NCBI RefSeq assembly: GCF_023055435.1
Contig: NW_025963783.1
Location: 620,001 to 684,000 of the forward strand
Reading direction: 5' to 3'
Length of the DNA stretch: 64,000 bases
Source of the DNA: Haliotis rufescens
Taxonomy: Eukaryota
The notes beneath the pieces are model-generated. The model was given only the letters and a program-made list of their open reading frames with translations, was not told where the DNA came from and ran no database searches. Each line of letters opens with the position of its first letter. The stretch's first letter is position 1. The translations under genes were made by a program, and so were the position numbers. Of the stretch, positions 12,019 to 60,890 are shown in pieces.

Positions 12019-12181
12019 NNNNNNNNNNNNNNNNNNNNNNNNNNNNNNNNNNNNNNNNNNNNNNNNNNNNNNNNNNNNNNNNNNNNNNNNNNNNNNNNNN
12101 NNNNNNNNNNNNNNNNNNNNNNNNNNNNNNNNNNNNNNNNNNNNNNNNNNNNNNNNNNNNNNNNNNNNNNNNNNNNNNNNN
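12019..12181. other. N-gap at the cassette microsatellite (also 24855-25073, 40095-40312, 52669-52864)
   Basis: All four N runs occupy the position of the (GT)n tract that is resolved in cassette 1. Confidence 0.9.
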
Positions 12182-17039: not shown

Positions 17040-19923
17040 ATGGCGATGCACAGGACATTGACAGACAATTTATTGACGTGCAGCATCTGCATGGACGTCT
17101 TTGATGACCCCTGTACACTTGTGTGTTATCACACATTTTGTCGGAAATGTGTCGTTAGCTACACTGAAACCAGACCAGAAGCCATCAGTGCCAAGTCTCT
17201 CCTCTGTCCATTCTGTCGTAAGATGACCAAAGTAGCCAATTCAAACAGGCCAGTTGAAGAGTGGGCACAGGAGGTGAAACCCAGCTTCTTGATTCAGGGT
17301 CTCATGGATTCCTTCGCTCCCTGCAGTCAAGGTATAAGTATACACCAGAGACCAAGGTGGTTGGACTTCCACTCAATCCATATAGTTTTAATTCATCTTC
17401 AACACAGGCAACAGTATTGTCCCATCTATGAGAGACTCGTTTTTGTCCTAACATTACTTGAATATCTCTGTCATTTCTTTCAGTGGCACACTATTAGACC
17501 TGCAGTCAATCCTGTAACATATTTTCTCGTTTGCTTCTGAGACAAATGATTGATTCTCATGATTTTGAAGTGAGGTAATTGACCTTGTCTGGTCACAATG
17601 CCATGTAATGTCAACGCCGTTATTATTGCATACGAACACAAAAATACATTTCTCAATTTATTGTTGTATCAACAGAATTTTGTTATTATCAAGTTCATAG
17701 ACTTATATTTTTAGTGACATTCTAACATGTCTTCGCAAGAATGACTTTTAAGCTTTAAAGACGAATGCTGCTTGCAGGGTTTTTTTATTACTAGTTGATA
17801 GGTACTGTATTTTTTAAACAGGTACTGTATTTTCTATGTTGGAAAACCAAAACGAACCAACCTAAACGTAAAATGTGTACTTGAGTATTCCAGTTATAGC
17901 ATCGCGTGTCAGTTTGATGAGTGTGGAAAACTCGATCCGATGTCAAATGTCACTTTGGTGAAACCCACGAGCACAAGAATGGTGCGGACATACCATGAAA
18001 CATAATGAGGGCGACTCTGGGATTTGAGGGATGCAGATATGCAGATTTAGAAGACTGCGCCACTGGTGCCCCTTAAATGGGTACTGATAAGGAAAGGATA
18101 AATGTCTTTATAAAGATGACGCAAACAGGTGGTCATTTATTCATATTGATAGGTTTTATATTCATGTGGAGCACTTTCTTCGTGCATCCTAACATAACCT
18201 ATATTTCTCTGTAAACAACATTAGATATAAACCATGTCAACATAATACATGTGTATATTTCTTTTTAGGAACAAATAACTGCAACTTATGTGATGATGAC
18301 GGGGAGGCAACTCTGGCTACATCTTGGTGTTCTGACTGTGACGTCTCGCTGTGTGGTGGATGTCTTAAGGCCCATGTTCGTAATCCTGCCTCCCGTCACC
18401 ATGACGTATCTGACTTGTCAAGGGATGTCAAGGTGAAGAAAAGACGCAAACCTATGTGTAAAGAACATCCAGATCAGAGGATTCAGTTCTGCTGCAAGGA
18501 ATGTAAGAAACTACAATGTCAATCGTGTTGCATCTTGTATCACAGAAAATGTGAGTCCATTGTCTCGCTTGAATCTGTGTTGCCTAAAATGCAAAACACT
18601 CTTCAAACTGTGAAACAGAAACTAGAGACTGATTTAGCAACATCAAACACTCGCCTTGCAAAGAAGGAAGCAAAATGTACTGAAATTAATGAGAACAAGT
18701 CAAGCCTTCAGTCTCAGGTCCGATCAGCAACCCACACCGCCATTGACTTGATAAAGAAGAAGGAAAGACAACTCCTGGAACAAATAGATGACGTCACAGA
18801 GAAACAAATAGGACAGATGAAAGGAGACATTAAGCGTGAGGAGATGGCCAGGCAGATGATTCGTCAACACTCGGAGTTGCTGGGCAGAGCTCTGGAGTCT
18901 GAGAGTGACGTGGTCATCTGTGAGATGTATCTGTGGAGTGAGTCGGAGGAGGCAGCCACTGTGTGTGTCCCGGAGTCAGGTATGGAGGATGTATCTGGGG
19001 GCAAGGCTTGTTTCATACACGATCGTCATCTGATGTGTGAGGAACTAAACGATCTACACTTGGGTGTGGTTGATATCATTGTTGGTGATGTTTTTGATTC
19101 TACATCTACAGCAGTTCTGTATGACACAGTGGACATACAGGCAGAAGATGATAAGAAGAAACCCAATGCTCTTGACGTGGCAGTGTTTGTTGTCGACAAC
19201 ACAGACACCATAGTTGTGACAGATTGTGACAACAAGTGTGTGAAATCCTTCTACAAAAGAAACAAGAAGTCATGTCAGAGTAAGCTGGGGGTACAAAGCG
19301 CTCCTCGATGTATTGCAAAATTAAACAATAATAAAATGGCTGTGACTCTCCATGGCACTAAGGAAATAATAATAGTAGAAGTGAAGCCTGAACTGGTTCT
19401 TCAATCATCCATCTCCACAAGGAAGGGGTACTACGGTCTGACATCCCTGACACCGACAACCCTGGCAGCAGGATCCGGGGATCCTCCCTGTGTGGACATC
19501 CTGGACATGACGGGGAATGTGTTGAGGACCCTGGATCCTGTCACAGATGGAGAGAGTCTTGCATCAGCTCCTTGGTTCCTCAGTACCACCAGGCAGGGTA
19601 ACATCCTCGTGTCTTACCTTGGATACGCTCACAGGGTCCTCTGTTTGACTCCTCATGGAGATGTTGTGTTCAGGTATCATCCTACACAGCAGTGGCCTTT
19701 CTTTGCTGGAATCACTGAAACCAACACAGGACATATCCTGGTTATAGATTACAATGCACAATGTGTGATTCAACTCAGCGCTTCTGGGACGTTTGTGAGG
19801 GAAGTCTTGACGTCACGTGATGGTATTACATCTCCGTATGGTCTCTACCTGTCTGAAAGTCAGCACCTGTATGTCATCGATGATGACTGTGTGAAGATCT
19901 ACAGTTTTACAGGAAACACCTAA
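17040..19923 (+). CDS. TRIM-A2: intact TRIM-NHL E3 ubiquitin ligase-like protein, 648 aa (RING, 2 B-boxes, coiled coil, NHL propeller)
   Basis: Exons 17040-17331 and 18269-19923 total 1947 nt with no internal stop. NHL blades show P.DVAV...IVVTD..NK and P.GL.....LYV.D motifs. Confidence 0.93.
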
Positions 19924-22519: not shown

Positions 22520-24622
22520 TCATGTACATCTTGGTTTGGTGCGTGTTATAAACCTGTAGACCATCACACAGTGGCGGTTGGTGACGTACAGACGCCTCCG
22601 CTTATCAAAGTACAGGCCATAAGGGAAAGTGATGCCATCCCTTGACGTCAGAACGTCTCTCAACCAAGTGCCTGAACTACTCAAATGAACCACTTTGTTT
22701 GACATGTCGTCAACAACAAGCATGTCGCCTGTGTGTGTTCCTTTGATGCCTGTGGGTACATAATTTAACACAACATCTCCGTTTGGTGTCATACATAGGA
22801 CATGACTTCTTGGGGCATGACTGCATGACACTAGGATGTAACCTTGACTGGTGGTTTATAGGAATAAAGGATCTGATACAAGGGTTCCCCCATCTGTGAC
22901 ACGATTCAGCGTCCTCAACACATTCCCCGCCATGTCCAGGATGTCCACACAGGGAGGCGACCCGGATCCTGCTGCCAGGGTAGTCGATGTCAGGGCTGTC
23001 AGACCAAAGTACTTCTTCCTCGTTGAAACGTATGATTGAAGAACAAGGTCAGGGTTCACTTCAATCACTATTATCTCCCTTGTCTCGGGAAGGGTCACGG
23101 CCATGTGATGGGCATTAAGTTTTGCAATCCGCCGAGGGGAGCTCTGAACAGAGAGCTTACTCTGACAGGGTTGAGTATTGCGTGTGTAGAAGGATTTGAC
23201 GCACTTGTTGTTATTATCAGTTACAACTATGGTGTCTGTACCGCCTTCATTGAACACTGCCACGTCATAAACATGAGGTAAACTTGTCTCATCTTCTGTT
23301 TGTATGTCCACTGTGTCGTGCAGAACTGATGTCGATGTAGAATCAAACACATCTTCATATATGGTATCAATTTCACCAAGCTCACCTCGTGAATATTGTT
23401 ACAGATCTCTACACAATCATGCATAAAACATACTTTCTCTTTCAGTTCATATTTTATATCTGAATCTGGGCCGTATACTGTAGGAAACTCCTCTGACTCA
23501 TACCACAGGTACATCTCATAGATGTCCATTTCACTTCCAGACTCCAGAGCTCTGTCTATCATCACAGAGTGATGACTTATCATCTGCTTGGCCATCTCTT
23601 CAGACTTTATTTCAGTTTTCAATCGCTCGATCTGTTTCTCAGTGGCGTCATCCAATTGGTCCAGGAGTTGTCGTTCCTTCTTCATTGTGGCTTCTGTGAC
23701 TGTCTGGATTGTGGATCGGATCTGACACTGAACGGTGACTCTGTTCTTCATTACCTCAGTCCGTTTGGTTTCTAAATCCGTTAGCAAACTGTCTGTTGCT
23801 TGTAAATGAGACGCTAGTCTTTCCTTAACTCTTGTAACACAGCTGATCAGTTCTGGCATAACAGATTCAAACGGTAGAATTGCCTCACACTTTCTGTGAT
23901 ACAGGAACCAAAAGGATTGACATTGCAGTTTCTTACAATCTTTGCAGTAGAACTGCATGCTTTGATCTGGATATTGCTTACAGAATGGTTTGCGTTTTTG
24001 GTTGATTTTGACCTCTGTGGACAGGTCAGATACGTCATGGTGACGAGTGGCAGGAATACGTCTGTGAGCCTTCTGGCATCCCTCACAAAGACTGATGTCA
24101 CAGTCAGCACACCAAGCAGTGGCTGGAGGTGCCGCTCCTTTATCACTGCATAGGATGCACTTCGGGGTATCTGCAAGTATACATACAAATGTGTCAGTTA
24201 TTTTTCAACAATAGAACTATAATATTACGAAATAACCTTTAACCTTTCAATGTGCATACAAGGAATTCACAAACCAGGGATATAAGGAACGTAGCAATGT
24301 TAGGATGAGTTCAACACTGGTAGCCTATTCGGAAATACCTTATGTCTTGGGATTTAAAGAATCAGGGAGACCTTGACTCAAAAAGCTTGGTTTCACCTCC
24401 TGTGCCCACTCTTTAACTGGCCTGTTTGAGTTGCCTACTTTGGTTATCTTACGACAGAATGGACAGAGGAGAAACTTGGCACTGATGGCTTCTGGTCTGG
24501 TTTAAGTGTAGCTAACGGCACACTTCTTACAAAATCTTACACATAAGTGTACAGGGGTCATCAAGGACCATGCAGATGCTGCACGTCAGGAAGTTGTCTG
24601 TCAATTGTCAGTGCACTGCCAT
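22520..24622 (-). pseudogene. TRIM-B3; full-length but heavily disabled
   Basis: CGA>TGA at codon 5; upstream acceptor AG>CG; indels in the RING exon (24622-24339). Exon 2 (24170-22520) has CC>FW in B-box2, a frameshift at ~23375, a stop at 22856 and an in-frame deletion at ~22748. Confidence 0.92.
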
Positions 24623-29088: not shown

Positions 29089-31817
29089 ATGGCGATGCAC
29101 AAGACATTAACAGACAATTGCTTGACTTGCAGCATCTGCATGGACGTCTTTGATGACCCCTGTGTGTTATCACACATTTTGTCGGAAGTGTGTCGTTAGC
29201 TACACTGAAACCAGACCAGAAGCCATCAGTGCCAAGTCTCTCCTCTGTCCATTCTGTCGTAAGATGACCAAAGTAGCCAACTCAAACAGGCCAGTTGAAG
29301 AGTGGGCACAGGAGGTGAAACCCAGCTTCTTGATTCAGGGTCTATTGGATTCCTTCGCTCCCTGCAGTCAAGGTATAAGGAGACATTAGAGACCATGGTG
29401 GTTGGACTTCCACTCAATCCATATAGTTTTAATTCTATGACGGACTCGTTTTTGTCCTAACATTACTTGAATATCTCTGTCATTTCTTTCAGTGGCACAC
29501 TATTAGACCTGCAGTCAATCCGGTAAGATATTTTCTCGTTTGCTTCTGAAACAAATTATTGATTCTCATGATTTTGAAGCAATGTTATTGACCTTGTCTG
29601 GTCACAATGCCACGTATTTAACGCCTTTATTATTGCATACGAACACAAAAATACATTTTTCAATTTATTGTTGTATCAACTGAATTTTGTAATTTTCAAG
29701 TTCATAGAATTATATTTATGGTGACATTCTAACATGTCTTCGCAAGAATGACTTTTAAGCTTCTAAAAACGAGTGCTGCTTGCAGGTGTTTTTATTACCA
29801 GTTGATAGGTACATTTTATTGTGGAAAACTCGATCAGTTGTCAAATGTCACTTTGGTGAAACCCATGGGCACAAGGATTGCGCCGACATACCATGAAACA
29901 TGATGAGGGCAACCCTGGGATTTGAGGGATACAGATATGCAGATTTAGACGACTGCGCCCCTGTTTCCCCTTAAATTGGTACTGAAAAAGGGAAGGATAA
30001 ATGTCTTTATAAAGATGACGCAAATAGGTGGTCTTATATTCATATTTCCTATTCATGTGAAGCACTTTCTAAGTGCATCCTAATAGAACCTATATTTCTT
30101 TGTACACCACCTTAAATATTATTTATATCAGCATAATACATGTGTATATTTCTTTTCAGGAACAAATAACTGCAACTTTTGTGACGAGGACGGGGAGACA
30201 ACTCCAGCCAATGCTTGGTGCGTCGAATGTAATGTCTCGCTCTGTGATGGATGCCTGAAGGCACATAGAAGTATCCCTGCCACCCGTCACCATGACGTAT
30301 CTGACTTGTCAAGGGATGTCAAGGTAAAGACAAGACGCAAACCTATGTGTAAAGAACATCCAGATCAGAGGATGCAGTTCTACTGCAAGGACTGTAAGAA
30401 ACTACAATGTCAATCGTGTTGCATCTTGTATCACAGAAAGTGTGAGCCCATTGTCTCGCTTGAATCTGTGTTGCCTGAAATGCAAAACACTCTTCAAACT
30501 GTGCAACAGAAACTAGAGGCTTATTTGGCAACATCAAACACTCGCCTTGCAAAGAAGGAAGCAAAATGTACTGAAATTAATGAGAACAAGTCAAGCCTTC
30601 AGTCTCAGGTCCGATCAGGAACCCAGGCCGCCATTGACTTGATAAAGAAGAAGGAAAGACAACTCCTGGAACAAATAGATGACGTCACAGAGAAACAAAT
30701 AGGACAGCTGAAAGGGGACATGAAGCGTGAGGAGATGGCCAGGCAGATGATTCGTCAACACTCGGAGTTGCTGGGCAGAGCTCTGGAGTCTGAGAGTGAC
30801 GTGGACATCTGTGAGATGTATCTGTGGAGTGAGTCGAAGGAGGCAGCCACTGTGTGTGTCCCAGAGTCAGGTATGGAGGATGTATCTGGGGGCAAGGCTT
30901 GTTTCATACACGATCGTCATCTGATGTGTGAGAAACTAAACGATCTACACTTGGGTGTGATTGATATCATTGTTGAAGATGCTTTTGATTCTCCATCAAC
31001 AGCAGTTCTGTATGACACAGTGGACATACAGGCAGAAGATGATGAGAAGAAACCCAATGCTTTTGACGTGGCAGTGTTTGTTGTCGACAACACAGACACC
31101 ATAGTTGTGACAGATCGTGAAAACAAATGTGTGAAATCCTTCTACAAAAGAAACAAGAAGTCATGTCAGAGTAAGCTGGAGGTACAAAGCGCCCCTCTAC
31201 GTATTGCAAATTTAAACAACAATAAAATGGCTGTGACTCTCCCTAACACTAAGAAAATAATAATAGTAGAAGTGAAGCCTGAACTGGTTCTTCAATCATC
31301 TATCTCTACAAGGCAGAGGCATGTGGGTCTGACATCCCTGACACCGACAACCCTGGCAGCAGGATCACTGGATCCTCCCTGTGTGGACATCCTGGACATG
31401 GCGGGGAATGGGTTGAGGACCCTCGATCCTGTCACAGATGGAGGGAGACTTGTATCAGATCGTTCGTTCCTCAGTACCACCAGGCAGGGTAACATCCTCG
31501 TGTTCGGCAGTGGATACGGAGCTGGCAGAGTCCTCTGTCTGACTCCTCATGGAGATGTTGTGTTCAGGTATCGGCCTAAACAGCTGAATCCTTTCCCTCG
31601 TGGAATCACTGAAACCAACACAGAACATATCCTGGTTATAGATCGCAGAGCAAAATGTGTGATTCAACTCAGCGCTTCTGGGACGTTTGTGAGGGAAGTC
31701 TTGACGTCACGTGATGGTATTACATCTCCGCATGGTCTCTACCTGTCTGAAAGTCAGCACCTGTATGTCATCGATGATGACTGTCTGAAGATCTACAGAT
31801 TTACAAGAAACAACTAA
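29089..31817 (+). pseudogene. TRIM-A3; 8-nt frameshift in the RING exon, exon 2 fully open
   Basis: Exon 29089-29372 is 284 nt versus 292 in the other copies; tgtacact is lost at ~29163, giving TAG at 29197-29199. Exon 2 (30160-31817) has no stop. Confidence 0.9.
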
Positions 31818-38034: not shown

Positions 38035-39642
38035 TGCCTGAACTGCTCAAATGAACCACTTTGTTTGACATGTCGTCAACAACAAGCATGTCGCCTGTGT
38101 TTGTTCCAGTTCCAGTGATTAAGCATTAAGTTTTGCAATCCGCCGAGGGGGGCTCTGAACAGAGAGCTTACTCTGACAGGGTTGAGTATTGCGTGTGTAG
38201 AAGGATTTGACGCACTTGTTGTTATTATCAGTTACAACTATGGTGTCTGTACCGCCTTCATTGAACACTGCCACGTCATAAACATGAGGTAAACTTGTCT
38301 CATCTTCTGTTTGTATGTCCACTGTGTCGTGCAGAACTGATGTCGATGTAGAATCAAACACATCTTCATATATGGTATCAATTTCACCCAAGCTTACCTC
38401 GTTTATATTGTTACAGATCTCTTCACAATCATGCTTAAAACATACTTTCTCTCTCAGTTCATATTTTATATCTGAATCTGAGTCGTATACTGTAGGAAAC
38501 TCCTCTGACTCACACCACAGGTACATCTCATAGATGTCCATTTCACTTCCAGACTCCAGAGCTCTGTCTATCATCACAGAGTGATGACTTATCATCTGCT
38601 TGGCCATCTCTTCAGACTTCATTTCAGTTTTCAGTCGCTCGATATGTTTCTCAGTGGCGTCATCCAGTTGGTCCAGGAGTTGTCGTTCCTTCTTCTTTAT
38701 GGCTTCTGTGACTGTCTGGATTGTGGATCGGATCTGACACTGAACGGTGACTCTGTTCTTTATTACCTCAGTCCGTTTGGTTTCTAAATCTGTTAGCAAA
38801 CTCTCTGTTGCTTGTAAATGAGACGCTAGTCTTTCCTTAACTCCTGTAACACAGCTGATCAGTTCTGGCATAACGGATTCAAACGGTAGAATTGCCTCAC
38901 ACTTTCTGTGATACAAGATGCAACAGGATTGACATTGCAGTTTCTTACAATCTTTGCAGTAGAACTGCATGCTTTGATCTGGATGTTGCTTACAGAATGG
39001 TTTGCGTCTTTGGTTGATTTTGACCTCTGTGGACAGGTCAGATACGTCATGGTGACGAGTGGCAGGAATACGTCTGTGAGCCTTCTGGCATCCCTCACAA
39101 AGACTGATGTTACAGTCAGCACACCAAGCAGTGGCTGGAGGTGCCGCTCCTTCATCACTACATAGGATGCACTTCGGGGTATCTGCAAGTATACATACAA
39201 ATGTGTCAGTTATTTTTCAACACAAGAACTATAATATTACGAAATAACCTTTAACCTTTCAATGTACAGACGAGGAATTCACAAACCGGGGATATGAACA
39301 ATGTAGCTATGTTAGGATGAGTTCAACACTGGTAGCCTATTCGGAAATACCTTTTGTCTTGGGATTAAATGAATCCAAGAGACCCTGAATCAAAAAGCTT
39401 GGTTTCACCTCCTGTGCCCACTCTTCAACTGGCCTGTTTGAGTCGGCTACTTTGGTCATCTTTCTACAGAATGGACAGAGGAGAGACTTGGCACTGATGG
39501 CTTCTGGTCTGGTTTTAGTGTAGCTAATGACACATTTCCGACAAAATGTGTGATAACACACAAGTGTACAGGGGTCATCAAAGACGTCCATGCAGATGCT
39601 GCACGTCAAGAAGTTGTCTGTCAATTGTCGGTGCACTGCCAT
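38035..39642 (-). pseudogene. TRIM-B4; open for 451 aa, truncated in the second NHL blade
   Basis: Exons 39642-39351 and 39182-38119 (stop after IAKLNA, created by a ~390-nt deletion). A residual NHL piece at 38035-38118 abuts TE-derived DNA. Confidence 0.9.
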
Positions 39643-40425
39643 CTAAAATGTTAAAATAAAAATATTGGCATTCTCAACTTAACATCATACACCTTTTAAT
39701 CCATAAGAACCTATTTTTGTTTTTGATTGATATACGGGCAGTTTTATCAAAAATGAACTCACAGAGAGTAGATATGATACAACGATCTTTAAAGACATGA
39801 AGTAGTTTGTTATGTGCTCATGTTGCTCCGACACATGTTCATGTTCCACTGTCTATCAATGACAACAATGTTGAACAACATATAAAAGCGGTCAGTAAGT
39901 GGGAGCTCAGTTCGTGAGTTACAGTTTTGTGGATGAAAATATTAATGCTTGAAAATAGCTCAGTGTCATTTCACAGTTCCCAAATAATCACTCCACAATA
40001 CAAAGACAAAGTTATGTTTTGGAACGCGTTATTGCGTTATTGCGCGAATCCCTTAGGGTGCACATGTGTGTCTGTGTGTTTATTGGATGCATGTNNNNNN
40101 NNNNNNNNNNNNNNNNNNNNNNNNNNNNNNNNNNNNNNNNNNNNNNNNNNNNNNNNNNNNNNNNNNNNNNNNNNNNNNNNNNNNNNNNNNNNNNNNNNNN
40201 NNNNNNNNNNNNNNNNNNNNNNNNNNNNNNNNNNNNNNNNNNNNNNNNNNNNNNNNNNNNNNNNNNNNNNNNNNNNNNNNNNNNNNNNNNNNNNNNNNNN
40301 NNNNNNNNNNNNATGTGAATGTGTTTCTGTATGTGTGTTTATGTATGTGGCTGCTTGTACTTAATGCCGGTTTCATGTTGCTAGCCCACTATGCATTGAG
40401 ACACCATACCGCATTTTAACATGAA

Positions 40426-40703
40426 AGTGAGTGAGTGAGTTGGGTGTAACGCTGCTTTTAACAGTATTCCAGTTATATCAGGCGTGTCAGCTTAATGTGG
40501 GAGGAATTCCCGAAGTGATGCAGATCTCAGACGTTTACCACTTCGGTAAAACCCACGAGCATGGGTATGGTGCTGACAATCCTAGAAACATAATCGGGGC
40601 GAACCGGGATTCGAACCCACAATCATAAGTTTCTGACGTGCCCAAGGGACGCTACTGTGCACAGCGAATCACGGCGCCTTAGATGACTGGGCCACCCGTG
40701 CCC
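40426..40703 (-). mobile_element. Nested SINE with clear target-site duplication
   Basis: Flanked on both sides by tttaacatgaa; (tgag)n tail; ggattcgaacc B-box-like motif. Confidence 0.75.
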
Positions 40704-42317
40704 CTTTAACATGAATTCCACACTCCGACACAATATACTGACTCCAAGCCAACCAGTTCTTGTCTTAGCTCCTTAATGCCGAGCATGTGGCCGGGGATCG
40801 GACTACAGACCTTCTGCTGTCTGGGCAGTCGCTCTATCCACTAGACCACGGAGACAGTCTCAGTTGCTATGAAAACATAAACATGACCAATGATTATTGA
40901 GATAATGTCATGAGAATAATATATGTACCTAGATATTGTCAATGAAAGGCACCTGTCACGGTTTGCAAGACAGTCAGATGTTTGTAATTGAAGTATTGAT
41001 TGATACATGTTTAGAAGAGCTGTAACCATGAACCTGATGATCCAGTTTCAGTCCTGTGTCACTAATAGTAATGTCAGAAAATGCTGTCCAATAGGAAGAC
41101 AATGTACAATACAACAAACAGAAATTATACCTCGACACAGAAACAAAGAAAATACCACTTCACTATGATGTAGCACCAGACAACATACTTGCTCGGTAAT
41201 CAAGAAAATACCTTTAGCTTCGTCAGATGTCTCCTCCAACCATTCTGCTGGACTGACTGTCTGTCTCGGTATTGTAAGAGGCGGGGCTGTACACTGACAC
41301 AGGCTGCTCATAAACGCTCTCACGCAGCTAGCTGGTCACCATATGTTGCAATATCGATAGTTAATGCAGTATAACATTTGTATTGTGCATGTTTTTTGTA
41401 TGACTGCACACATATTGCACCTGAGGCGATGTTTGGTGGGCGGAAGTGTAGTAATATGTCGGGAATTCAATCAAACTGAGTATTTACAAGTTCAACTTTT
41501 GAGTTCATGCAACAGATTCCATTTTGCGAAAGGGTTTAAATGCTTTACCAAATATCCTGAAACAAAGGAATGCTAGTGGATGTTGAAGCGCATGTTGTAA
41601 TTTGGGCCACTATCGTGTGAAGGTATGTATATTTCAATATTACAATTACTATAAGTTACAAACAGGGCCCATTCTCAGACATTAAGCTGATAAGCAGTTA
41701 TATTGCTGAATTATTGTTCAAAGAGCAGTCAATAAAATTTAATGACGACATTATGATGTAGCTGCTTGTCTATCGGTTCAATATTGATTTGTATTGTTCA
41801 CGTCAGGTATCATGAGAATTGCAATATTGTTTATGACGTAATGCATTCTGGTGACCGAAAACATGAGTGTCGCTCATATCTCAACATGCAGTTTCATAAA
41901 AAAACTCCTGTCATCAATAGTAAGCTCAAAGAGGGTACAATTATTGAAAGACATAGACGTGTTAACAATTTACAAAAATGAACCCTTGTAAACCAAGGTG
42001 ACCACAAGCTGCCTTTACATACTAGTACAACCCGTGTGGACGTGTATCACTTTCTGCATAGAGCATTGTTTGGACGATGTGTTTGCATTGATTTGGTTTG
42101 AACTTGTGTTTTTAATTTATTGCAATTTCATTTATAAATTTGTAAAGTTTGTTTTGGCCGCAGGTTTATATCACTGTTTAATGTAGAATAAATAACGTGT
42201 GGGGTGTAGTGTATACTGTATAGCGTGTATATAATGTGCTGGTGAGTTTTACCAAGTACAATGTCTACAAGTATTTCGTATTCCTAGTGTTTCAATGTCA
42301 TCCTGTTTCACTGCCAG

Positions 42318-42454
42318 GGGCAACAGTACGTCACGCGCTGCCGGCGACCTGTGTCGACAAGTGGAGCAACTGTGACTCCTACCCTCACTCGTGTGCGCCA
42401 GTGTACAAAGACTGGGCGTCCGCCAACTGTGCCCGCTTCTGCAACTTGTGCTGA
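42318..42454 (+). CDS. ShKT-domain terminal exon, cassette 4 (intact, orphan)
   Basis: GATVRHALPATCVDKWSNCDSYPHSCAPVYKDWASANCARFCNLC* after a ctgccag acceptor. Confidence 0.72.
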
Positions 42455-43532
42455 GCGTCTTGGAATCTGTACCGAGAAGAGGAGAGACGCATAGAGTCTG
42501 CACTGCGAGATTTTGTTGCTGTAAACACATGGGAGAGGGGGGAAGGGAAGCACTTTGCTGCAGTTTGTAATGGATACCCGCATGCAGTGTAATGAAACCC
42601 AACCAGTCACTCCTTGTTTTATTCCCTAAACATCGAGCGCCAGGCAGGGAAACAACAAGTGTTATCTTTTAACGTGTTGTGCTATGACGCTGCCAAAGGA
42701 TCGAAGGCTCAAAAGTTAGCTGTGCAGAGTTGCTGTGCGGAATTCCAGCTTTGCCTTGATTATGATGTTTTTGCTGCCCGCACCTTACCGTGCCTGTAGT
42801 TTCCACACCTGTTTAACTGAAACAGCTTTCAAAGTTTACCAAAACTCACTCGCTGAAAGACTTTAACAGCGCTTAATTAACAGTATTTCAGTTACATATG
42901 GCCGGCAGAGTGTTTGTGGTCGGACTCGATGTAGTTAATAGACGTTTGCAACTGTGGTGAAACCCACGTGCACAGGTATGGTGCTGACAACCCTAGAAAC
43001 AATCAGGGCGAATCTGTGATCCGAACTGACGACATCAGGCATGGTCTAAGGGAAGCAACTCTGCACAGTCTATTACGCGCCTTACACAACTGAGCTCCTA
43101 GTGGGGAACTGAGCCAAACTGAATGGAATCAAATATTCTTTACATTACTTTTGACTCATGTGATTCATGCATAGGAAATGTAGGATGATCATATCGGAAT
43201 CGAATAAGTCAATTCTTTCAAATAGTTCAATAAATTACAGATACACTGATGAACAATAAATAGACGACAAAAACAAACATCAGGAAAACGAAACACTGTT
43301 GTGGAGTATACACTGGACGCGTCCCTGCATGTCAGTCGCTATCAGTGTTTCACCTGCAGTGACTAGGCTGGATACCAGTATGTGTGCATCAGATAACGCA
43401 TAGCAGCTGACCGACCCGCCCCTCGACACGCCAGGACACAGTCGACATGGCGTCGGGCAGACTGGAAGAATGAGAGGTTAAACCACTGACAAGTAAAGGT
43501 AATGGGAGCATTGGCAACATGGAAGTTTGTTT

Positions 43533-43775
43533 GACGTCCCGCATATACTTGATCAGTGTGTCGTCCCGTATATACTTGATGAGTGTGACGTCCAGTATAT
43601 ACTTGATCAGTGCGACGTCCAGTATATACTTGATCAGTGCGACGTCCCGTATATACTTGATCAGTGTGTCGTCCCGTATATACTTGATCAGTGTGTCGTC
43701 CCGTATATACTTGATCAGTGTGACGTCCAGTATATATTTGATCAGTGCGACGTCCCGTATATACTTGATGAGTGT
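43533..43775. repeat. 27-bp VNTR, 9 units
   Basis: Nine tandem gacgtcc(c/a)gtatatacttgat(c/g)agtg(t/c) units. Confidence 0.93.
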
Positions 43776-45055
43776 GACATGCCACAGGTGTATGGAAGGG
43801 GTGAAAATAGCTTCATACTTCCTGGATGTACATGGTCGTATAGTTTCTGCGTGGGCTTTATTATAAGATTTAGTTACAGTTTATTTTGAACGTTGCATCA
43901 GCAAAGTGTCAGCAATATAGATCCAGATCCATTGTCAAAACTTGTTTTTATTTAAAGCAACAGATGTCAGTGTTATTTACACAACACGAGTCCATCTATT
44001 CCTAGAATAGAAGGGCGGATCAAGCATTTCTGGGGAGGGGTCCAACATATCCAAATCTTCGTTCAGATAAGTTTACTGCCTACACAATTTGTCTTTAAAA
44101 GAAAGAGGAGGGGGACCTTTGGACACCCCCCACCCCTCCCTGGGTCAGCCAACAGAATCAAAGATTCTACTTTCGTTATGCAAATGTACTGGAATGAGTC
44201 ATGGCCATATATAAGCATTTTACGGAAGTTTCAACATGATTGAGCTGGCGGTGGTTCATGCATGGGGTGTTACACAATACTGAAACTTGTCGTAAACTTG
44301 CGATGTCCTGAAACCAACCAACCAACCAGCCAATCAGTCAACAAATCAATCAGTATGTTTTCATGATACGGTTGAGGCCAAAGGCCGGGTTGTTACCAGT
44401 TCTCAAAGCATAACAAATGAACAACTATATTATTATGGATTCTGTGCAATATTTTGCAAAATTTGTTTACATGTCCATTGTGGTAAAAGTAGTGATTTAG
44501 ATACTATTTTCTGAACTAATTATACATTTTGACATCATTTGTTGCAACTTGTACAAAATCTAAGTTCTCTTAAAATATTTGCACAATGCCTCTTTCAATA
44601 AAAGAATCACGTGAGCTATAACAGAGTCCAGAAAGAGCAAGGCAAACTTATGTCAAATTACAATTAGAAGATCATTAATGGTCTACTACTAAAGTAGTCT
44701 TGAATATGGTCCTGCACCATGACTGTGGAATATATGTATTTTATAAAAACAAAACCTATTTAGTTTTATATAAAAACAATTCTAGCCAGCTCTAACAATC
44801 CCTATGAAATCAGCATCAGGAACATTAATTGTTTTTATTTAAGAAGAGAGAAATGTTATGTGTAATAAAATATTACAAAGACGATGTATTAGTCTGTCTC
44901 AGTGTTAGTGTAGTAATTGGCTTTGTTGGAGCTGGACGAGTAATTACTTGAAATTATGATGATAAATCTTTTACTTCACCTCAACTGAAAATATATAATT
45001 CACAAAAGGGTCAAAATCTAAATTGTTTGTTCATAAATATGTTTTACTATTACAG

Positions 45056-47823
45056 ATGGCGATGCACAGGACATTGACAGACAATTTCCTGACTTGCAGC
45101 ATCTGCATGGACGTATTTGATGACCCCTGTACACTTGTGTGTTATCACACATTTTGTCGGAAATGTGTCGTTAGCTACACTGAAACCAGACCAGAAGCCA
45201 TCAGTGCCAAGTCTCTCCTCTGTCCATTCTGTCGTAAGATGACTAAAGTAGCCGACTCAAACAGGCCAGTTGAAGAGTGGGCACAGGAGGTGAAACCAAG
45301 CTTCTTGATTCAGGGTCTCATGGATTCCTTCGCTCCCTGCAGTCAAGGTATAAGTATACACCAGAGACCATGGTGGTTGCACTTCCACTCAATCCATATG
45401 GTTTTAATTCATCTTCAACACAGGCAACAGTATTTACCCATCTATGACATACTCGTTTTTGTCCTAACATTACTTGAATATCTCTGTCATTTCTTTCAGT
45501 GGCACACTATTAGGCCTGCAGTTAATCCTGTAACATATTTGCTCGTTTGCTTCTTAGACAAAGTATTGATTCTCATGATTTTGAAGTAATGTCATTGACC
45601 TTGTCTGGTCACAATGCCACGTAATGTTAACGCCTTTCTTATTGCATACGAACACAAAAATACATTTTTCAATTTATTGTTGTATCGACTTTTTATTACC
45701 AGTTGATAGGTACGTTTTATTAACAGGTACTGTATTTTCTATGTTGGAAAACCAAAATGAACCAACCTAAACGTGAAATGTGTACTTGAGTATTCCAGTT
45801 ATAGCATCGCATGTCAGTTTGATGAGTGTGGAAAACTTGATCCGATGTCAAATGTCACTTTGGTGAAACCCACGAGCACAATAATGGTGCGGACATACCA
45901 TGAACATAATGAGGGCGACTCTTGGATTTGTAGGATGCAGACATGCAGATTAAGAAGGGCGCGCCACTGGTGCCCCTTAAATGGGTACTGATAAAGGAAA
46001 GGATAAATGTCTTTATAAAGATGACGCAAATAGGTGCTCTAATATTCATATTTCCTATTCATGTGAAGCACTTTCTAAGTACATCCTAACATAACCTATA
46101 TTTCTCTGTAAACAACCTTAAATATAAACCATGTCAACATAATACATGTGTATATTTCTTTTTAGGAACAAATAACTGCAACTTATGTGATGATGATGGG
46201 GAGGCAACTCCAGCTACATCTTGGTGTTCTGACTGTGAAGTCTCGCTGTGTGGTGGATGTCTTAAGGCCCATGTTCGTAATCCTTCCTCCCGTCACCATG
46301 ACGTATCGGACATGTCAAGGGATGTCAAGGTGAAGAAAAGACGCAAACCTCTGTGTAAAGAACATCCAGATCAGAGGATGCAGTTCTACTGCAAGGACTG
46401 TAAGAAACTACAATGTCAATCGTGTTGCACCTTGTATCACAGAAAGTGTGAGTCCATTGTCTCGCTTGAATCTGTGTTGCCTGAAATGCAAAACACTCTT
46501 CAAACTGTAAAACAGAAACTAGAGACTGATTTAGCAACATCAAACACTCGCCTTGCAAAGAAGGGAGCACAATGTACTGAAATTAATGAGAACAAGTCAA
46601 GCCTTCAGTCTCAGGTCCGATCAGCAACCCACACCGCCATTGACTTGATAAAGAAGAAGGAGAGACAACTCTTGGAGCAAATAGATGTCATCACAGAGAA
46701 ACAAATAGGACAGCTGAAAGGAGACATGAAGCGTGAGGCGATTGCCAGGCAGATGATTCGTCAACACTCGGAGTTGCTGGGCAGAGCTCTGGAGTCTGAG
46801 AGTGACGTGGACATCTGTGAGATGTATCTGTGGAGTGAGTCGGAGGAGGCAGCCACTGTGTCTGTCCCAGAGTCAGGTATGGAGGATGTATCTGGGGGCA
46901 AGGCTTGTTTCATACACGATCGTCATCTGATGTGTGGGAAACTAAACGATCTACACTTGGGTGTGATTGATATCATTGTTGAAGATGTTTTTGATTCTAC
47001 ATCTACAGCAGTTCTGTATGACACAGTGGACATGCAGGCAGAAGATGATAAGGAAAAACCCAGTCCTTTTGACGTGGCAGTGTTTGTTGTCGACAACACA
47101 GACACCATAGTTGTCACAGATTATGACAACAAGTGTGTGAAATCCTTCTACAAAAGAAACAAGAAGTCATGTCAGAGTAAGCTGGGGGTACAAAGCGCTC
47201 CTCTATGTATTGCAAAATGAAACAATAATAAAATGGCTGTGACTCTCCATGGCACTAAGGAAATAATAATAGTAGAAGTGAAGCCTGAACTGGTTCTTCA
47301 ATCATCCATCTCTACAAGGAAGGTGTATGTGGGTCTGACATCCCTGACACCGACAACCTTGGCAGCAGGATCACTGGATCCTCCCTGTGTGGATATCTTG
47401 GACATGGCGGGGAATGTGTTGAAGACCCCGGATCCTGTCACAGATGGAGAGAAACTTGTATCAGATCCTTGGTTCCTCAGTACCACCAGGCAGGGTAACA
47501 TCCTCATGTCTTGCGGGGAATACGGAGCTCGCAGTGTCCTCTGTCTGACTCCTCATGGAGATGTTGTGTTCAGGTATCAGCCTACACAGCCGTGGCCTTC
47601 CCTTCGTGGAATCACTGAAACCAACACAGGACATATCCTGGTTATATATCTCAATGCAAATTGTGTGTTTCAACTCAGCGCTTCTGGGACGTTTGTGAGG
47701 AAAGTGTTGACGTCACGTGATGGTATTACATCTCCGCATAGTCTCTGCCTGTGTGAAAGTCAGCACCTGTATGTCATCGATGATGACTGTTTGAAGATCT
47801 ACAGATTTACAAGAAACACCTAA
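45056..47823 (+). pseudogene. TRIM-A4; single nonsense codon in the second NHL blade (448 aa product)
   Basis: Exons 45056-45347 and 46166-47823. TTA>TGA at 47218-47220, after which the frame continues to the normal stop. Confidence 0.9.
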
Positions 47824-50473: not shown

Positions 50474-52231
50474 CTATTCAAAATGACCGAGATCACTCTT
50501 CATGTCCTCTTGGTTTGGTGCGTAGAACCTGTAGACCATCACACAGTGGCGGTTGGTGACGTACAGATGCCTCAGCTTATCAAAGTACAGGCCATAAGGG
50601 AAAGTGATGCCATCCCTTGACGTCAGTACGTCTCTCAACCATGTGCCTGAACTACTCAAATGAACCACTTTGTTTGACATGTCGTCAACAACAAGCATGT
50701 CGCCTGTGTTTGTTCCAGTGATGCCGCATGGATTCATTGCTCGGTGTTGTCCTGTGGGTACATAATTAAACACAACATCTCCGTTTGGTGTCATACATAG
50801 CAAATGACTTCTTGGGGCATGACTGCAAGACACCAGGATGTAACCTTGACTGGTGGTAGATAGGAATAAAGGATCTGATACAAGGATTCCCCCATCTGTG
50901 ACACGATTCAGCGTCCTCAATACATTCCCCGCTATGTCCAGGATGTCCACACAGGGAGGCGACCCGGATCCTGCTGCCAGGGTAGTCGGAGTCAGGGCTG
51001 TCAGACCAAAGTACTTCTTCCTCGTTGAAATGTATGATTGAAGAACAAGGTCAGGGTTCACTTCAATCACTATTATCTCCCTTGTCTCGGGAAGGGTCAC
51101 GGCAATGTGATGGGCACTAAGTTTTGCAATCCGCCGAGGGGGGCTCTGAACAGAGAGCTTACTCTGAAATGGTTGAGTATTGCGTGTGTAGAAGGATTTG
51201 ACGCACTTGTTGTTATTATCAGTTACAGCTATGGTGTCTGTACCACCTTCATTGAACACTGCCACGTCATAAACATGAGGTAAACTTGTCTCATCTTCTG
51301 TTTGTATGTCCACTGTGTCGTGCAGAACTAATGTCGATGTAGAATGAAACATATCTTCATATATGGTCTTAATTTCACCCAAGCTTACCTCGTGTATATT
51401 GTTACAGATCTCTTCACAATCATTCATAAAACATACTTTCTCTCTCAGTTCATATTTTATAACAGATTCAAACGGTAGAATTGCCTCACACTTTCTGTGA
51501 TACAAGATGCAACAGGATTGACATTGCAGTTTCTTACAATCTTTGCAGTAGAACTGCATGCTTTGATCTGGATGTTGCTTACAGAATGGTTTGCGTCTTT
51601 GGTTGATTTTGACCTCTGTGGACAGGTCAGATACGTCATGGTGACGAGTGGCAGGAATACGTCTGTGAGCCTTCTGGCATCCCTCACAAAGACTGATGTC
51701 ACAGTCAGCACACCAAGCAGTGGCTGGAGGTGCCGCTCCTTCATCACTGCATAGGATGCACTTCGGGGTATCTGCAAGTATACATACAAATGTGTCAGTT
51801 ATTTTTCAACAATAGAACTATAATATTACGAAATAACCTTTAACCTTTCAATGTACATACGAGGAATTCACAAACCAGGGATATGAACAACGTAAATATG
51901 TTAGGATGAGTTCAGCACTGGTAGCCTATTCGGAAATACCTTTTGTCTTGGGATTAAATGAATCCAAGAGACCCTGAATCAAAAAGCTGGGTTTCACCTC
52001 CTGTGCCCACTCTTCAACTGGCCTGTTTGAGTTGACTACTTTGGTCATCTTTCGACAGAATGGACAGAGGAGAGACTTGGCACTGATGGCTTCTGGTCTG
52101 GTTTTAGTGTAGCTAACGACACATTTCCGACAAAATGTGTGATAACACACAAGTGTACAGGGTTCATCAAAGACGTCCATGCAGATGCTGCACGTCAAGA
52201 ACTTGTCTGTCAATTGTCGATGCACTGCCAT
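50474..52231 (-). CDS. TRIM-B5: open 529-aa ORF, RING-B1-B2-NHL lacking the coiled coil
   Basis: Exons 52231-51940 and 51771-50474 total 1590 nt with no internal stop. In-frame 402-nt deletion at ~51460 (FESV|IKYE). A small frameshift at ~50523 alters only the tail. Confidence 0.85.
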
Positions 52232-58162: not shown

Positions 58163-60890
58163 ATGGCGATGCACAAGACATTGACAGACAATTTCCTGAC
58201 TTGCAGCATCTGCATGGACGTCTTTGATGACCCCTGTACACTTGTGTGTTATCACACATTTTGTCGGAAATGTGTCGTTAGCTACACTGAAACCAGACCA
58301 GAAGCCATCAGTGCCAAGTCTCTCCTCTGTCCATTCTGTCGTAAGATGACCAAAGTAGTCAACTCAAACAGGCCAGTTGAAGAGTGGGCACAGGAGGTGA
58401 AACCCAGCTTCTTGATTCAGGGTCTCATGGATTCCTTCGCTCCCTGCAGTCAAGGTATAAGTATACACCAGAGACCATGGTGGTTGGACTTCCACTCAAT
58501 CCATATAGTTTTAATTCATCTTCAACACAGGCAACAGTATTGTCCCATCTATGACAGACTCGTTCTTGTCCTTGAATAGCTCTGTCATTTCTTTCAGTGG
58601 CACACTATTAGGCCTGCAGTCAATCCTGTAACATATTTGCTCGTTTGCTTCTGAGACAAAGTTTTGATTCTCATGATTTTGAAGTAATGTTATTGACCTT
58701 GTCTGGTAACAATGCCACATAATGTTAACGCCTTTCTTATTGCATACGAACACAAAAATACATTTTTCAATTTATTGTTGTATCGACTTTTTATTACGAG
58801 TTGATAGGTACGTTTTATTAACAGGTACTGTATTTTCTATGTTGGAAAACCAAAATGAACCAACCTAAACAAGAAATGTGTATTTGAGTATTCCAGTTAT
58901 AGCATCGCATGTCAGTTTGATGAGTGTGGAAAACTTGATCCGATGTCAAATGTCACTTGGGTGAAACCCACGAGCACAAGAATGGTGCCGACATACCATG
59001 AAACATAATGAGGACGACTCTGGGATTTGTGGGATGCAGACATGCAGATTTAGAAAACTGCGTCACTGGTGCCCCTTAAATGGGTACTGATAAAGGAAAG
59101 GATAAATGTCTTTATAAAGATGACGCAAAAAGGTGCTCTTATATTCATATTTTCTGTTCATGTGAAGCACTTTCTAAGTACATCCTAACATAACCTATAT
59201 TTCTCTGTAAACAACCTTAAATATGAATCATGTTGACATAATACATGTGTATATTTCTTTTTTAGTAACAAATAACTGCAACTCATGTCATGATGATGGG
59301 GAGGCAACTCTGGCTACATCTTGGTGTTCTGACTGTGAAGTCTCGCTGTGTGGTGGATGTCTTAAGGCCTATGCTCGTAATCCTGCCTTCCGTCACCATG
59401 ACGTATCTGACTTGTCAAGGGATGTCAAGGTGAAGAAAAGACGGAAACCCATGTGTAAAGAACATCCAGATCAGAGGATGCAGTTCTACTGCAAGGACTG
59501 TAAAAAACTACAATGTCAATCGTGTTGCCTCTTGTATCACAGAAAGTGTGAGTCCATTGTCTCGCTTGAATCTGTGTTGCCTGAAATGCAAAACACTCTT
59601 CAAACTGTAAAGCAGAAACTAGAGACTGATTTAGCAACATCAAACACTCGCCTTGCAAAGAAGGAAGCACAATGTACTGAAATTAACGAGAACAAGTCCA
59701 GCCTTCAGTCTCAGGTCCGATCAGCAACCCACACCGCCATTGACTTGATAAAGAAGAAGGAAAGACAACTCCTGGAACAGATAGATGACGTCACAGAGAA
59801 ACAAATAGGACAGCTGAAAGGAGACATGAAGCGTGAGGAGATGGCCAGGCAGATGATTCGTCAACACTCGGAGTTGCTGGGCAGAGCTCTGGAGTCTGAG
59901 AGTGACGTGGACATCTGTGAGATGTATCTGTGGAGTGAGTCGGAGGAGGCAGCCACTGTGTGTGTCCCAGAGTCAGGTATGAAGGATGTATCTGGGGGCA
60001 AGGCTTGTTTCATACACGATCGTCATCTGATGTGTGAGGAACTAAACGATCTACACTTGGGTGTGATTGATATCATGTTTGAAGATGTTTTTGATTCTAC
60101 ATCTACAGCAGTTCTGTATGACACAGTGGACATACAGGTAGAAGATGATAAGAAGAAACCCTATGCTTTTGACGTGGCAGTATTTGTTGTTGACAACACA
60201 GACACCATAGTTGTAACAGATTATGGCCACAAGTGTGTGAAATCCTTCTACAAAAGAAACAAGAAGTCATGTCAGAGTAAGCTGGGTGTACAAAGCGCCC
60301 CTTTATGTATTGCAAAATTAAACAACAATAAAATGGCTGTGACTATCCTTAACAGTAAAGAGATAATAATAGTAGAAGTGAAGCCTGAACTGGTTCTTCA
60401 ATCATCCATCTCTACAAGGAAGGGGTATGTGGGTCTGACATCCCTGACACCGACAACCCTGGCAGCAGGATCCGTGTCTCCTCCCTGTGTGGACATCCTG
60501 GACATGGCGGGGATTGTGTTGAGGACCCTGGATCCTGTCACAGATGGAGAGATACTTGTATCAGATCCTTACTTTCTCAGTACCACCAGGCAGGGTAACA
60601 TCCTCGTGTCTTGCTGTGAAGAGGAAGCTGGCAGAGTCCTCTGTTTAACTCCTCATGGAGATGTTGTGTTCAGGTATCAGCCTATCCAGCAGTGGCCTTG
60701 CCTTCGTGGAATCACTGAAACCAACACAGGACATATCCTGGTTATAGAATGCAATGTAAATTGTGTGTTTCAACTCAGCGCTTCTGGGACGTTTGTGAGG
60801 GAAGTGTTGACGTCACGTGATGGTTTTATCCGCATAGTCTCTACCTGTCTGAAAGTCAGCACCTGTATGTCACCGATTATGACTGTGTAA
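58163..60890 (+). CDS. TRIM-A5: 638-aa ORF with frameshifted last NHL blade
   Basis: Exons 58163-58454 and 59266-60890. A net 4-nt loss at ~60825 replaces the last blade (ancestral stop at 60917-60919). B-box1 His>Tyr (CLKAYAR). Confidence 0.8.

What the first reader, a model, noticed from the sequence alone, without database searches (positions are those of the whole stretch)
39351..45347. RING exon homogenised between A and B, with pair-private shared variants (arm-to-arm gene conversion)
The core ~80 RING-exon residues differ at only 3 positions between A4 and B4, although their introns are unrelated and the coiled coils are far diverged. The default is GCC AAC (VAN) in A and GTC AAC (VVN) in B. 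B4 and A4 uniquely share GCC GAC (VADS), and both have aaaccaagc (also in B3). A5 carries the B-type VVNS like its partner B5. This points to two-way conversion between inverted partners, keeping the E3/dimerisation module identical while the sensor end diverges.
Basis: partly seen in the sequence, partly recalled or inferred. Interest (0 to 1): 0.78.

Follow-up and report, generated by a model that had tools for sequence, protein, structure and literature searches.

The report
Shared RING-exon core in paired TRIM genes
Two diverged, back-to-back immune-type ubiquitin-ligase genes, repeated many times in an invertebrate genome, carry an almost identical 210-base stretch because DNA was copied between them; this is a clear but ordinary case of gene conversion, and it is not shown to be limited to neighbouring partners.

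Summary
The sequence facts hold. A4 (45056-45347, +) and B4 (39351-39642, -) are the RING exons of a head-to-head TRIM-NHL pair, one of five pairs in the window. G000 holds at least 27 such exons (13 A, 14 B) on two contigs. Exon nt 40-248 has no fixed A/B difference. All 15 fixed differences lie in nt 6-17 and 273-289. A-B synonymous divergence is 0.08 in the core, against 1.4 and 0.5 at the exon ends and 0.5-0.8 in exon 2. Selection alone is therefore excluded, and gene conversion between A and B types is well supported. One copy (a4 on C79) carries B upstream flank inside an A exon. The edges of the tract also differ between sister copies.

The "pair-private" claim is weaker. GAC occurs in 7 of 27 copies and CCA in 5 of 27. 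Only the three-site haplotype is limited to A4 and B4. Partner tests over 12 pairs are not significant (P 0.17-0.38). Core divergence is about as large as non-coding divergence between units, so most homogenisation is as old as the array. Eight of ten window copies are broken or truncated, which weakens the functional reading. Cross-polishing could not be tested because only contigs were available. Another scan note (s1-805634) reports the same thing in the neighbouring unit.

The parts
39351..39642 (-). B4 RING exon (292 nt, phase-1 donor; acceptor AG directly before the ATG)
   Evidence: Pfam zf-C3HC4 / zf-RING_UBOX on its translation
39395..39603 (-). B4 homogenised core (exon nt 40-248)
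   Evidence: No fixed A/B difference here in 27 copies; core dS A-B 0.079
45056..45347 (+). A4 RING exon (292 nt, phase-1 donor GT at 45348; acceptor AG directly before the ATG)
   Evidence: closest solved chains are TRIM2/TRIM3 RING constructs
45095..45303 (+). A4 homogenised core (exon nt 40-248); C197, G199 and A243 lie at 45252, 45254 and 45298
40095..40312 (.). Run of N in the spacer between B4 and A4, outside both exons
   Evidence: not bridged by any listed contig piece
759..1050 (-). B1 RING exon
6045..6336 (+). A1 RING exon
11344..11635 (-). B2 RING exon
17040..17331 (+). A2 RING exon (A2 is the only window copy with both coding exons open)
24339..24622 (-). B3 RING exon, broken (3-nt and 5-nt deletions, stop codons)
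29089..29372 (+). A3 RING exon, broken (8-nt deletion)
51940..52231 (-). B5 RING exon
58163..58454 (+). A5 RING exon (T197, as in 6 of 14 B copies)
38119..39213 (-). B4 exon 2 (B-box 1, B-box 2, coiled coil, start of NHL); it ends early at about residue 367 of the A5 reference
46144..47823 (+). A4 exon 2 (B-boxes, coiled coil, NHL), with one in-frame stop at reference codon 351

Best explanation
The window is part of a tandem array of units 11-15 kb long. Each unit is a head-to-head pair of diverged TRIM-NHL genes (B on minus, A on plus).

Non-allelic gene conversion has overwritten the middle of the 292-nt RING exon between the two gene types. This is homologous-recombination repair that uses a paralogous RING exon as template. 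It leaves a shared core (nt 40-248) bounded by type-specific exon ends and by unrelated introns.

The exon is an island of homology. I infer that tracts cannot run into the unrelated flanks and need some matching sequence at each end, so the outer 30-45 nt escape and keep diverging.

The bulk of the homogenisation is about as old as the array. It was followed by several separate later transfers. B-to-A transfers are the clearly visible ones. The exchange is array-wide rather than limited to the two genes of a pair.

Shown: the homogenised core, its synonymous identity, the leaky and copy-specific edges, and one chimeric copy. Inferred: the repair mechanism, the edge effect, and the timing.
For: 1. 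Ten RING exons lie in the window. G000 has 27 at 86% identity or more, 13 on C5 and 14 on C79, out of 41 scored matches.
2. There are 18 fixed A/B differences among the 10 window copies and 15 among 26 genome copies (a4 left out). All lie in nt 6-30 and 249-289, and none in nt 31-248. The chance of that under even spread is 1e-9, uncorrected for choosing the limits afterwards.
3. Over 143 A-B pairs, dS is 0.079 in the core, 1.45 in codons 1-13 and 0.52 in codons 83-97. In exon 2 dS is 0.52-0.81 in 12 of 12 ORF comparisons. The 5' end has dN 0.18 with saturated dS. That is what selection without conversion looks like in this same exon.
4. Mean core difference is 2.0% for A-A, 4.5% for B-B and 3.7% for A-B. 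On the core tree the A/B label needs 5 changes, so neither type forms one side of a branch.
5. In a4, A exon nt 1-67 is followed by about 330 nt of B-type upstream flank and a B-type exon start, and the sequence returns to A type by nt 249.
6. Sister copies differ at the edges. A0 and a6 have introns 97.6% alike. A0 has the B state at nt 30, 34 and 39, and a6 has the B state at nt 249. A2 differs from a3 in the same way at nt 14, 34 and 39.
7. Twelve core sites are polymorphic in both types against 5.4 expected (P 0.0016), and 11 of them share the same two alleles.
Against: - Core A-B dS (0.079) is no lower than non-coding divergence between units. That is about 7% in A introns and about 9.5% in B flanks. 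The level of identity alone therefore does not require recent or continuing conversion.
- B-B core dS (0.093) equals the B flank divergence.
- The AU test does not reject A as one clade in the core (p 0.18). The A/B label is still clustered there: 5 changes against a shuffled mean of 9.3.
- Without the three broken RING exons (a4, A3, B3) the overlap of polymorphic sites is 5 against 3.3 expected (P 0.21).
- Core A-B distances follow neither partnership nor the relatedness of units (r -0.11).
- The phase of variants inside a core that is near-identical in 27 copies may be mis-assembled. No raw DNA reads were available to check this. The a4 chimera could also be an assembly join.
Confidence: 0.66

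Rival explanations
1. Conversion runs in both directions specifically between the two inverted genes of one pair (arm to arm). Each pair therefore shares private variants.
For: - The haplotype C197-G199-A243 occurs only in A4 and B4 (2 of 27 copies).
- On contig C5, 3 of 3 A-singleton alleles that also occur in B are carried by the partner (A3 G108, A4 A243, A5 T197). The chance of that is 0.044.
- A4-B4 and A5-B5 are closer than those copies' mean distance to the other type.
Against: - Over 12 pairs the summed partner distance is 90 against a permuted mean of 93.5, P 0.17.
- With nt 31-248 it is 112 against 113.5, P 0.38. On informative sites it is 71 against 72.7, P 0.37.
- Over both contigs there are 4 partner hits of 7 against 2.3 expected, P 0.14.
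- There is no effect of physical distance (Spearman 0.05, P 0.62).
- The single variants are spread over many copies.
- The arms are not a palindrome. Outside the exon core the inverted homology is only 72-75%.
- In 4 of the 5 window pairs the two partners are separated by a run of N.
Confidence: 0.1
2. There was one event only. The exon core was replaced once in the ancestral unit just before the array expanded, and nothing was exchanged afterwards. The shared variants and odd edges are recurrent mutations or assembly mis-phasing.
For: - Core A-B dS (0.079) matches the non-coding divergence between units.
- G199 lies in a CpG.
- Without a4, A3 and B3 the site overlap is not significant.
- The AU test does not reject A as one clade.
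Against: - Between the sisters A0 and a6, three switches to the B state fall within 10 nt. About 0.24 changes are expected there at their 2.4% intron divergence.
- A2, a1 and a6 show the same kind of switch.
- The a4 copy carries B-specific flank.
- Eleven of the 12 doubly polymorphic sites share both alleles.
- Core distances do not follow unit relatedness, which strict co-inheritance would predict.
Confidence: 0.15
3. Purifying selection on the RING domain alone keeps the core alike, with no DNA transfer.
For: The core encodes the zinc-binding RING and the segment after it. Core dN/dS is about 0.3.
Against: - Synonymous sites are homogenised too: pS is 0.075 in the core, against 0.64 and 0.37 at the ends of the same exon.
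- The 5' end is conserved as protein (2 of 13 residues differ between A4 and B4) yet saturated at silent sites.
- RING exons of other family members in the same genome are only 77-79% identical.
Confidence: 0.02
4. The shared core is an artefact of assembly or cross-polishing.
For: - Ten near-identical cores in 64 kb are hard to assemble.
- A4's private T at 45244 is read as C in the contigs of all 4 runs laid.
- Raw reads were not available.
Against: - Reads from sequence about 70% identical would not cross-map, so polishing cannot create a 209-nt shared core with sharp, in-frame, type-specific ends in all 27 copies.
- An independent individual's contig joins the B-type upstream sequence to core nt 1-156 with 2 differences (X5 record 25).
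- Fine-scale variant phase may still be affected.
Confidence: 0.03

Closest known systems
SIGLEC11 / SIGLEC16 (and SIGLEC5 / SIGLEC14) paired receptors: partial gene conversion between head-to-head paralogues
   Same: In both cases two diverged paralogues lie head to head a few kb apart. PMC5701461 gives about 9 kb for SIGLEC11/16 (passage read). Here the spacing is 5.4 kb. In both, conversion is confined to the 5' coding part while the rest of the genes stays different.
   Different: There the converted block is about 3 kb and includes introns and several exons. Here it is about 210 nt strictly inside one exon. Here the pair is also repeated at least 13 times, and exchange is not shown to be partner-specific. 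Whether A and B have opposite functions is unknown.
Concerted evolution and partial gene conversion in young primate TRIM clusters
   Same: This is also a TRIM gene family in segmental and tandem duplications with inverted copies. PMC3228819 (passages read) reports a recombination breakpoint between the RING and B-box 2 coding parts, and a suspected conversion between tail-to-tail copies.
   Different: Those are RING-B30.2 TRIMs of vertebrates, and the authors judged conversion 'not extensive'. Here the genes are TRIM-NHL-like, in an invertebrate-type genome. The RING core is homogenised across two types that differ by dS 0.5-0.8 elsewhere.
Arm-to-arm gene conversion in large palindromes, such as those of the human Y chromosome (recalled; no call)
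   Same: Both involve inverted repeats on one chromosome exchanging sequence without crossing over.
   Different: Palindrome arms are long and nearly identical throughout, including non-coding DNA. Here only 209-218 nt are alike and the remaining inverted homology is 72-75%. Partner specificity is not shown.
Class VII TRIM-NHL ligases (TRIM2, TRIM3, TRIM71, Brat)
   Same: The domain order is RING, B-box 1, B-box 2, coiled coil, NHL. The best solved relatives are TRIM2/TRIM3 RING (E 1e-9) and TRIM2 NHL (E 1.5e-10).
   Different: No filamin domain was detected. The genes form a large tandem array with many broken copies, unlike the single-copy conserved vertebrate genes.

Membership tests
Non-allelic (interlocus) gene conversion / concerted evolution | A segment between paralogues that is far less diverged than the flanking homologous sequence | tested here: met
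   A-B difference is 3.7% in the core, against 10-50% per 60-nt window of exon 2. There are 15-18 fixed differences in the outer 74 nt of the same exon.
Non-allelic (interlocus) gene conversion / concerted evolution | Silent sites are homogenised too, so selection on the protein cannot explain it | tested here: met
   dS is 0.079 in the core, against 1.45 and 0.52 at the exon ends and 0.52-0.81 in exon 2.
Non-allelic (interlocus) gene conversion / concerted evolution | The tree of the segment conflicts with the tree of the flanks | tested here: inconclusive
   On the core tree the A/B label needs 5 changes and no starred branch separates the types. The AU test does not reject A as one clade (p 0.18), and the label is still clustered compared with shuffles.
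Non-allelic (interlocus) gene conversion / concerted evolution | Mosaic copies with different tract ends, and polymorphisms shared between paralogues | tested here: met
   The edges of A0, A2, a1, a6 and b2 differ, and a4 is a chimera. Twelve sites are polymorphic in both types against 5.4 expected (P 0.0016). This weakens to P 0.21 without the three broken copies.
Non-allelic (interlocus) gene conversion / concerted evolution | Copies verified by reads that reach unique flanks | not testable with these tools
   Only Logan contigs and miRNA reads were on offer. The contigs break inside the repeat.
Palindrome-type arm-to-arm conversion | Long inverted arms that are nearly identical, non-coding sequence included | tested here: not met
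   The inverted pairs are 319 nt at 89%, 905 nt at 72% and 151 nt at 75%. The introns and the spacer are unrelated.
Palindrome-type arm-to-arm conversion | Exchange preferentially between the two arms of one unit | tested here: not met
   Partner permutation tests give P 0.17, 0.38 and 0.37 over 12 pairs. Tail-to-tail neighbours give P 0.98.
TRIM-NHL (class VII TRIM) E3 ligases | RING, B-box(es) and coiled coil in that order | tested here: met
   Pfam finds zf-C3HC4 / zf-RING_UBOX on exon 1, and ANCHR-like B-box, zf-B_box and a weak PML_CC match on exon 2.
TRIM-NHL (class VII TRIM) E3 ligases | C-terminal NHL beta-propeller | tested here: met
   Pfam NHL scores 26 bits in A2, above the cut-off of 20. 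TRIM2 and TRIM3 NHL chains match at E 1.5e-10 to 6e-10.
TRIM-NHL (class VII TRIM) E3 ligases | Filamin/ABP280 repeat between the coiled coil and NHL | tested here: not met
   No filamin family appears among the Pfam hits at E 0.01 or better.

The most novel reading that the evidence does not exclude
The A and B proteins of a pair work together as a hetero-oligomeric ligase, comparable to head-to-head sensor/helper immune receptor pairs. On this reading, conversion of the RING core is retained by selection because both partners must present the same RING dimer interface and the same E2-binding face, while their coiled coils and NHL propellers specialise. The shared core would then mark a paired-TRIM immune module in an invertebrate.
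Probability: 0.07. Interest if true: 0.7.

Novelty: new member of a known kind. Interest (0 to 1): 0.3.

Why it matters
This is a clean, well-bounded example of exon-internal concerted evolution in an expanded invertebrate TRIM family. The same exon supplies its own control: its ends are conserved as protein but saturated at silent sites.

For annotation and phylogeny of such families there is a practical consequence. RING-exon trees will mislead, and domain-wise trees are needed.

For genome assembly, the locus marks a place where about 27 near-identical 210-nt cores can be mis-phased.

It does not by itself reveal a new mechanism.

Tried and rejected
- Partner-specific exchange was tested four ways: all core sites, informative sites, tail-to-tail neighbours and physical distance. 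It was also tested with A-singleton alleles. None was significant over both contigs.
- Co-inheritance of A and B cores with their unit showed no correlation (r -0.11).
- GC-biased conversion: the core has GC 0.47 and GC3 0.50, against 0.46 and 0.47 in exon 2. There is no signal.
- The read-level test of cross-polishing was not possible. The 24 listed runs are Logan contigs, apart from three miRNA libraries. The four runs laid gave short contigs that break in the repeat, and none bridges the N run.
- Literature searches listed no paper on RING-exon-limited conversion in an invertebrate TRIM array. I read only the listings, plus passages of PMC3228819 and PMC5701461, so I make no claim of absence. 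PMC9732051 was seen in a listing only. Supplements were not consulted.
- The names Rozen 2003, Walsh 1987 and Teshima & Innan 2004, and the idea of a minimal homology length for conversion, are recalled and come from no call.
The exons were searched apart.
- I did not identify the species.
- The 'B up' matrix, and the sister pairs B4~b0 and B6~b1 drawn from it, are withdrawn. One search replaces that matrix.
Full report
**What is there.** The window is G000 contig C5, 620001-684000, from a 1.33-Gb genome. It holds ten copies of a 292-nt RING exon, five on each strand. They form five head-to-head pairs: B on the minus strand and A on the plus strand, 5-6 kb apart, in units of 11-15 kb. Each exon starts directly after a splice acceptor and ends at a phase-1 donor. 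A second exon encodes B-box 1, B-box 2, a coiled coil and NHL repeats. The closest solved chains are the TRIM2/TRIM3 RING and NHL domains. No filamin domain was found. I searched the exons apart and made no joined spliced model.

**The gap.** The N run at 40095-40312 lies in the spacer, 453-670 nt upstream of the B4 start codon and outside both exons. No listed contig piece bridges it. Its continuity is therefore untested, and the B4-A4 neighbourhood depends on it. Units 2, 3 and 5 have an N run at the matching place.

**The observation in the window.**
- A4 (45056-45347) and B4 (39351-39642) differ at 27 of 292 nt. Only 6 of those lie in nt 40-248.
- They differ at 9 of 97 residues. Two of those lie between residues 7 and 88.
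- Upstream sequences and introns do not align between A and B.
- Among the ten copies, 18 sites are fixed between A and B. All lie in nt 6-30 and 249-289.

**The wider set.** G000 holds at least 27 such exons at 86% identity or more. There are 13 on C5, so the array runs past both ends of the window. There are 14 on C79, in the opposite orientation. One further fragment and 13 family members at 77-79% identity were also scored (41 matches scored out of 185 candidates). By their exon ends the 27 are 13 A and 14 B.
- With a4 left out, 15 sites are fixed, all in nt 6-17 and 273-289.
- Mean core difference (nt 40-248) is 2.0% for A-A, 4.5% for B-B and 3.7% for A-B.

**Selection or conversion.** A3, a4 and B3 have indels in the exon and were left out of this count. 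Over 143 A-B pairs, dS is 0.079 in the core, 1.45 in codons 1-13 and 0.52 in codons 83-97. In exon 2, dS is 0.52-0.81 and dN is 0.20-0.34 in all 12 ORF comparisons. A-B identity in exon 2 ranges from 0.51 to 0.90 per 60-nt window. It is clearly not met. The 5' end of the exon is conserved as protein but saturated at silent sites. That shows what selection alone produces here.

**Direct footprints of transfer.**
- Copy a4 (C79, 1182233) has A-type upstream sequence and A exon nt 1-67. About 330 nt of B-type upstream flank follow, then a B-type exon start with B-enriched alleles up to nt 180. The sequence returns to A type by nt 249.
- A0 and a6 are sisters by intron (97.6% identical). A0 has the B state at nt 30, 34 and 39, and a6 has the B state at nt 249.
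- A2, whose sister is a3 (97.4%), has the B state at nt 14, 34 and 39. Copy a1 has it at nt 34 and 39.
- Twelve core sites are polymorphic in both types against 5.4 expected (P 0.0016), and 11 of them share both alleles. The excess fades to P 0.21 when a4, A3 and B3 are dropped.
- A-to-B transfer rests on single sites only (b2 T30, b6 C276, G199 in B4 and B6).

**Results against the 'pair-private, arm-to-arm' reading.**
- G199 is in 7 of 27 copies and lies in a CpG. A243 is in 5 of 27. T197 is in 6 of 14 B copies. Only the three-site haplotype is limited to A4 and B4.
- Over 12 complete pairs, partners are not closer than random A-B pairs: P 0.17, and P 0.38 and 0.37.
- Tail-to-tail neighbours (P 0.98) and physical distance (P 0.62) show nothing either.
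- A-singleton alleles that also occur in B hit the partner in 4 of 7 cases against 2.3 expected (P 0.14). On C5 alone it is 3 of 3 (P 0.044). That is a hint, not a result.

**Timing.** Core A-B dS (0.079) is about the same as the non-coding divergence between units. That is about 7% in A introns and about 9.5% in B flanks. B-B core dS is 0.093. Most of the homogenisation is therefore about as old as the array, with sporadic later transfers. On the core tree the A/B label needs 5 changes, which is still fewer than shuffles give. The AU test does not reject A as one clade (p 0.18). Core distances do not follow unit relatedness.

**State of the genes.**
- The RING exon is open in 8 of 10 window copies. 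A3 and B3 are broken.
- Across both exons only A2 is fully open.
- B5 is open but lacks the coiled coil.
- The other copies are damaged as follows:
  - A1 has a stop and deletions.
  - A4 has an in-frame stop.
  - A5 has a 4-nt deletion near the end.
  - B1 has an in-frame stop after B-box 2 and runs off the window.
  - B2 has deletions.
  - B4 ends early.
- A selective purpose for the shared core is therefore unproven.

**Reads.** Only Logan contigs and miRNA libraries were on offer. The four runs laid gave short contigs.
- One contig of another individual joins B-type upstream sequence to core nt 1-156 with 2 differences.
- A4's private T at 45244 reads C in all four runs.
- Two runs guessed to be RNA hold A-type exon ends.
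- Cross-polishing could not be tested.

**Comparison and verdict.** This is partial gene conversion between head-to-head paralogues. SIGLEC11/16 is a known case (PMC5701461, passage read), and there are hints of it in primate TRIM clusters (PMC3228819, passages read). Here it is confined to about 210 nt inside one exon and is repeated across a large invertebrate TRIM-NHL array. It is a new member of a known kind and of modest interest.

Noticed in passing
L013 (G000 C79, about 1182233-1182886): A-type RING exon copy a4 is interrupted after nt 67 by about 330 nt of B-type upstream flank plus a B-type exon start. It also has a 7-nt deletion at nt 38-44. It is either a direct footprint of B-to-A templated repair or an assembly join.
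   Followed up: partly
G000 C79 1135185-1224850: A second array of 7 A and 7 B RING exons lies in the opposite orientation. Its closest relatives on C5 (97-98% in introns) are not in the same order. It is therefore either a rearranged haplotype or a paralogous array.
   Followed up: partly
window 42320-42454 (+): An ShK-domain exon (Pfam PF01549, E 1.3e-6) lies in the spacer between B4 and A4. It ends in a stop codon. It is covered by contigs of two runs guessed to be RNA (records 15 and 21).
   Followed up: partly
window 40351-40750 and 42951-43150: Very high-copy, tRNA-like SINE sequence lies in the spacer. Summed contig depth is 1e4 to 4e6 in all four runs, and many joints run between the two copies.
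   Followed up: no
window 43530-43790: A tandem array of units about 30 nt long lies in the spacer upstream of A4. It produces spurious long ORFs on both strands.
   Followed up: no
window 59496-59555 (A5 exon 2, B-box 2) and 60450-60510: A-B identity rises to 0.90-0.94 and 0.87-0.93 here, against about 0.65 around. In B-box 2 the few differences are fixed silent changes. These may be older or rarer conversion tracts, or simply strong constraint.
   Followed up: partly
window 12019-12181, 24855-25073, 40095-40312, 52669-52864: Four runs of N each sit at the matching place upstream of a B RING exon. The copy of the genome reached by the genome search has letters there, so these may be a mask rather than gaps. 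The letters were not read.
   Followed up: no
window 7545-8183 (A1) and 3-640 (B1): A1 has an in-frame stop at reference codon 95, right after B-box 2. B1 has a 6-nt insertion with an in-frame TGA at the same point.
   Followed up: partly
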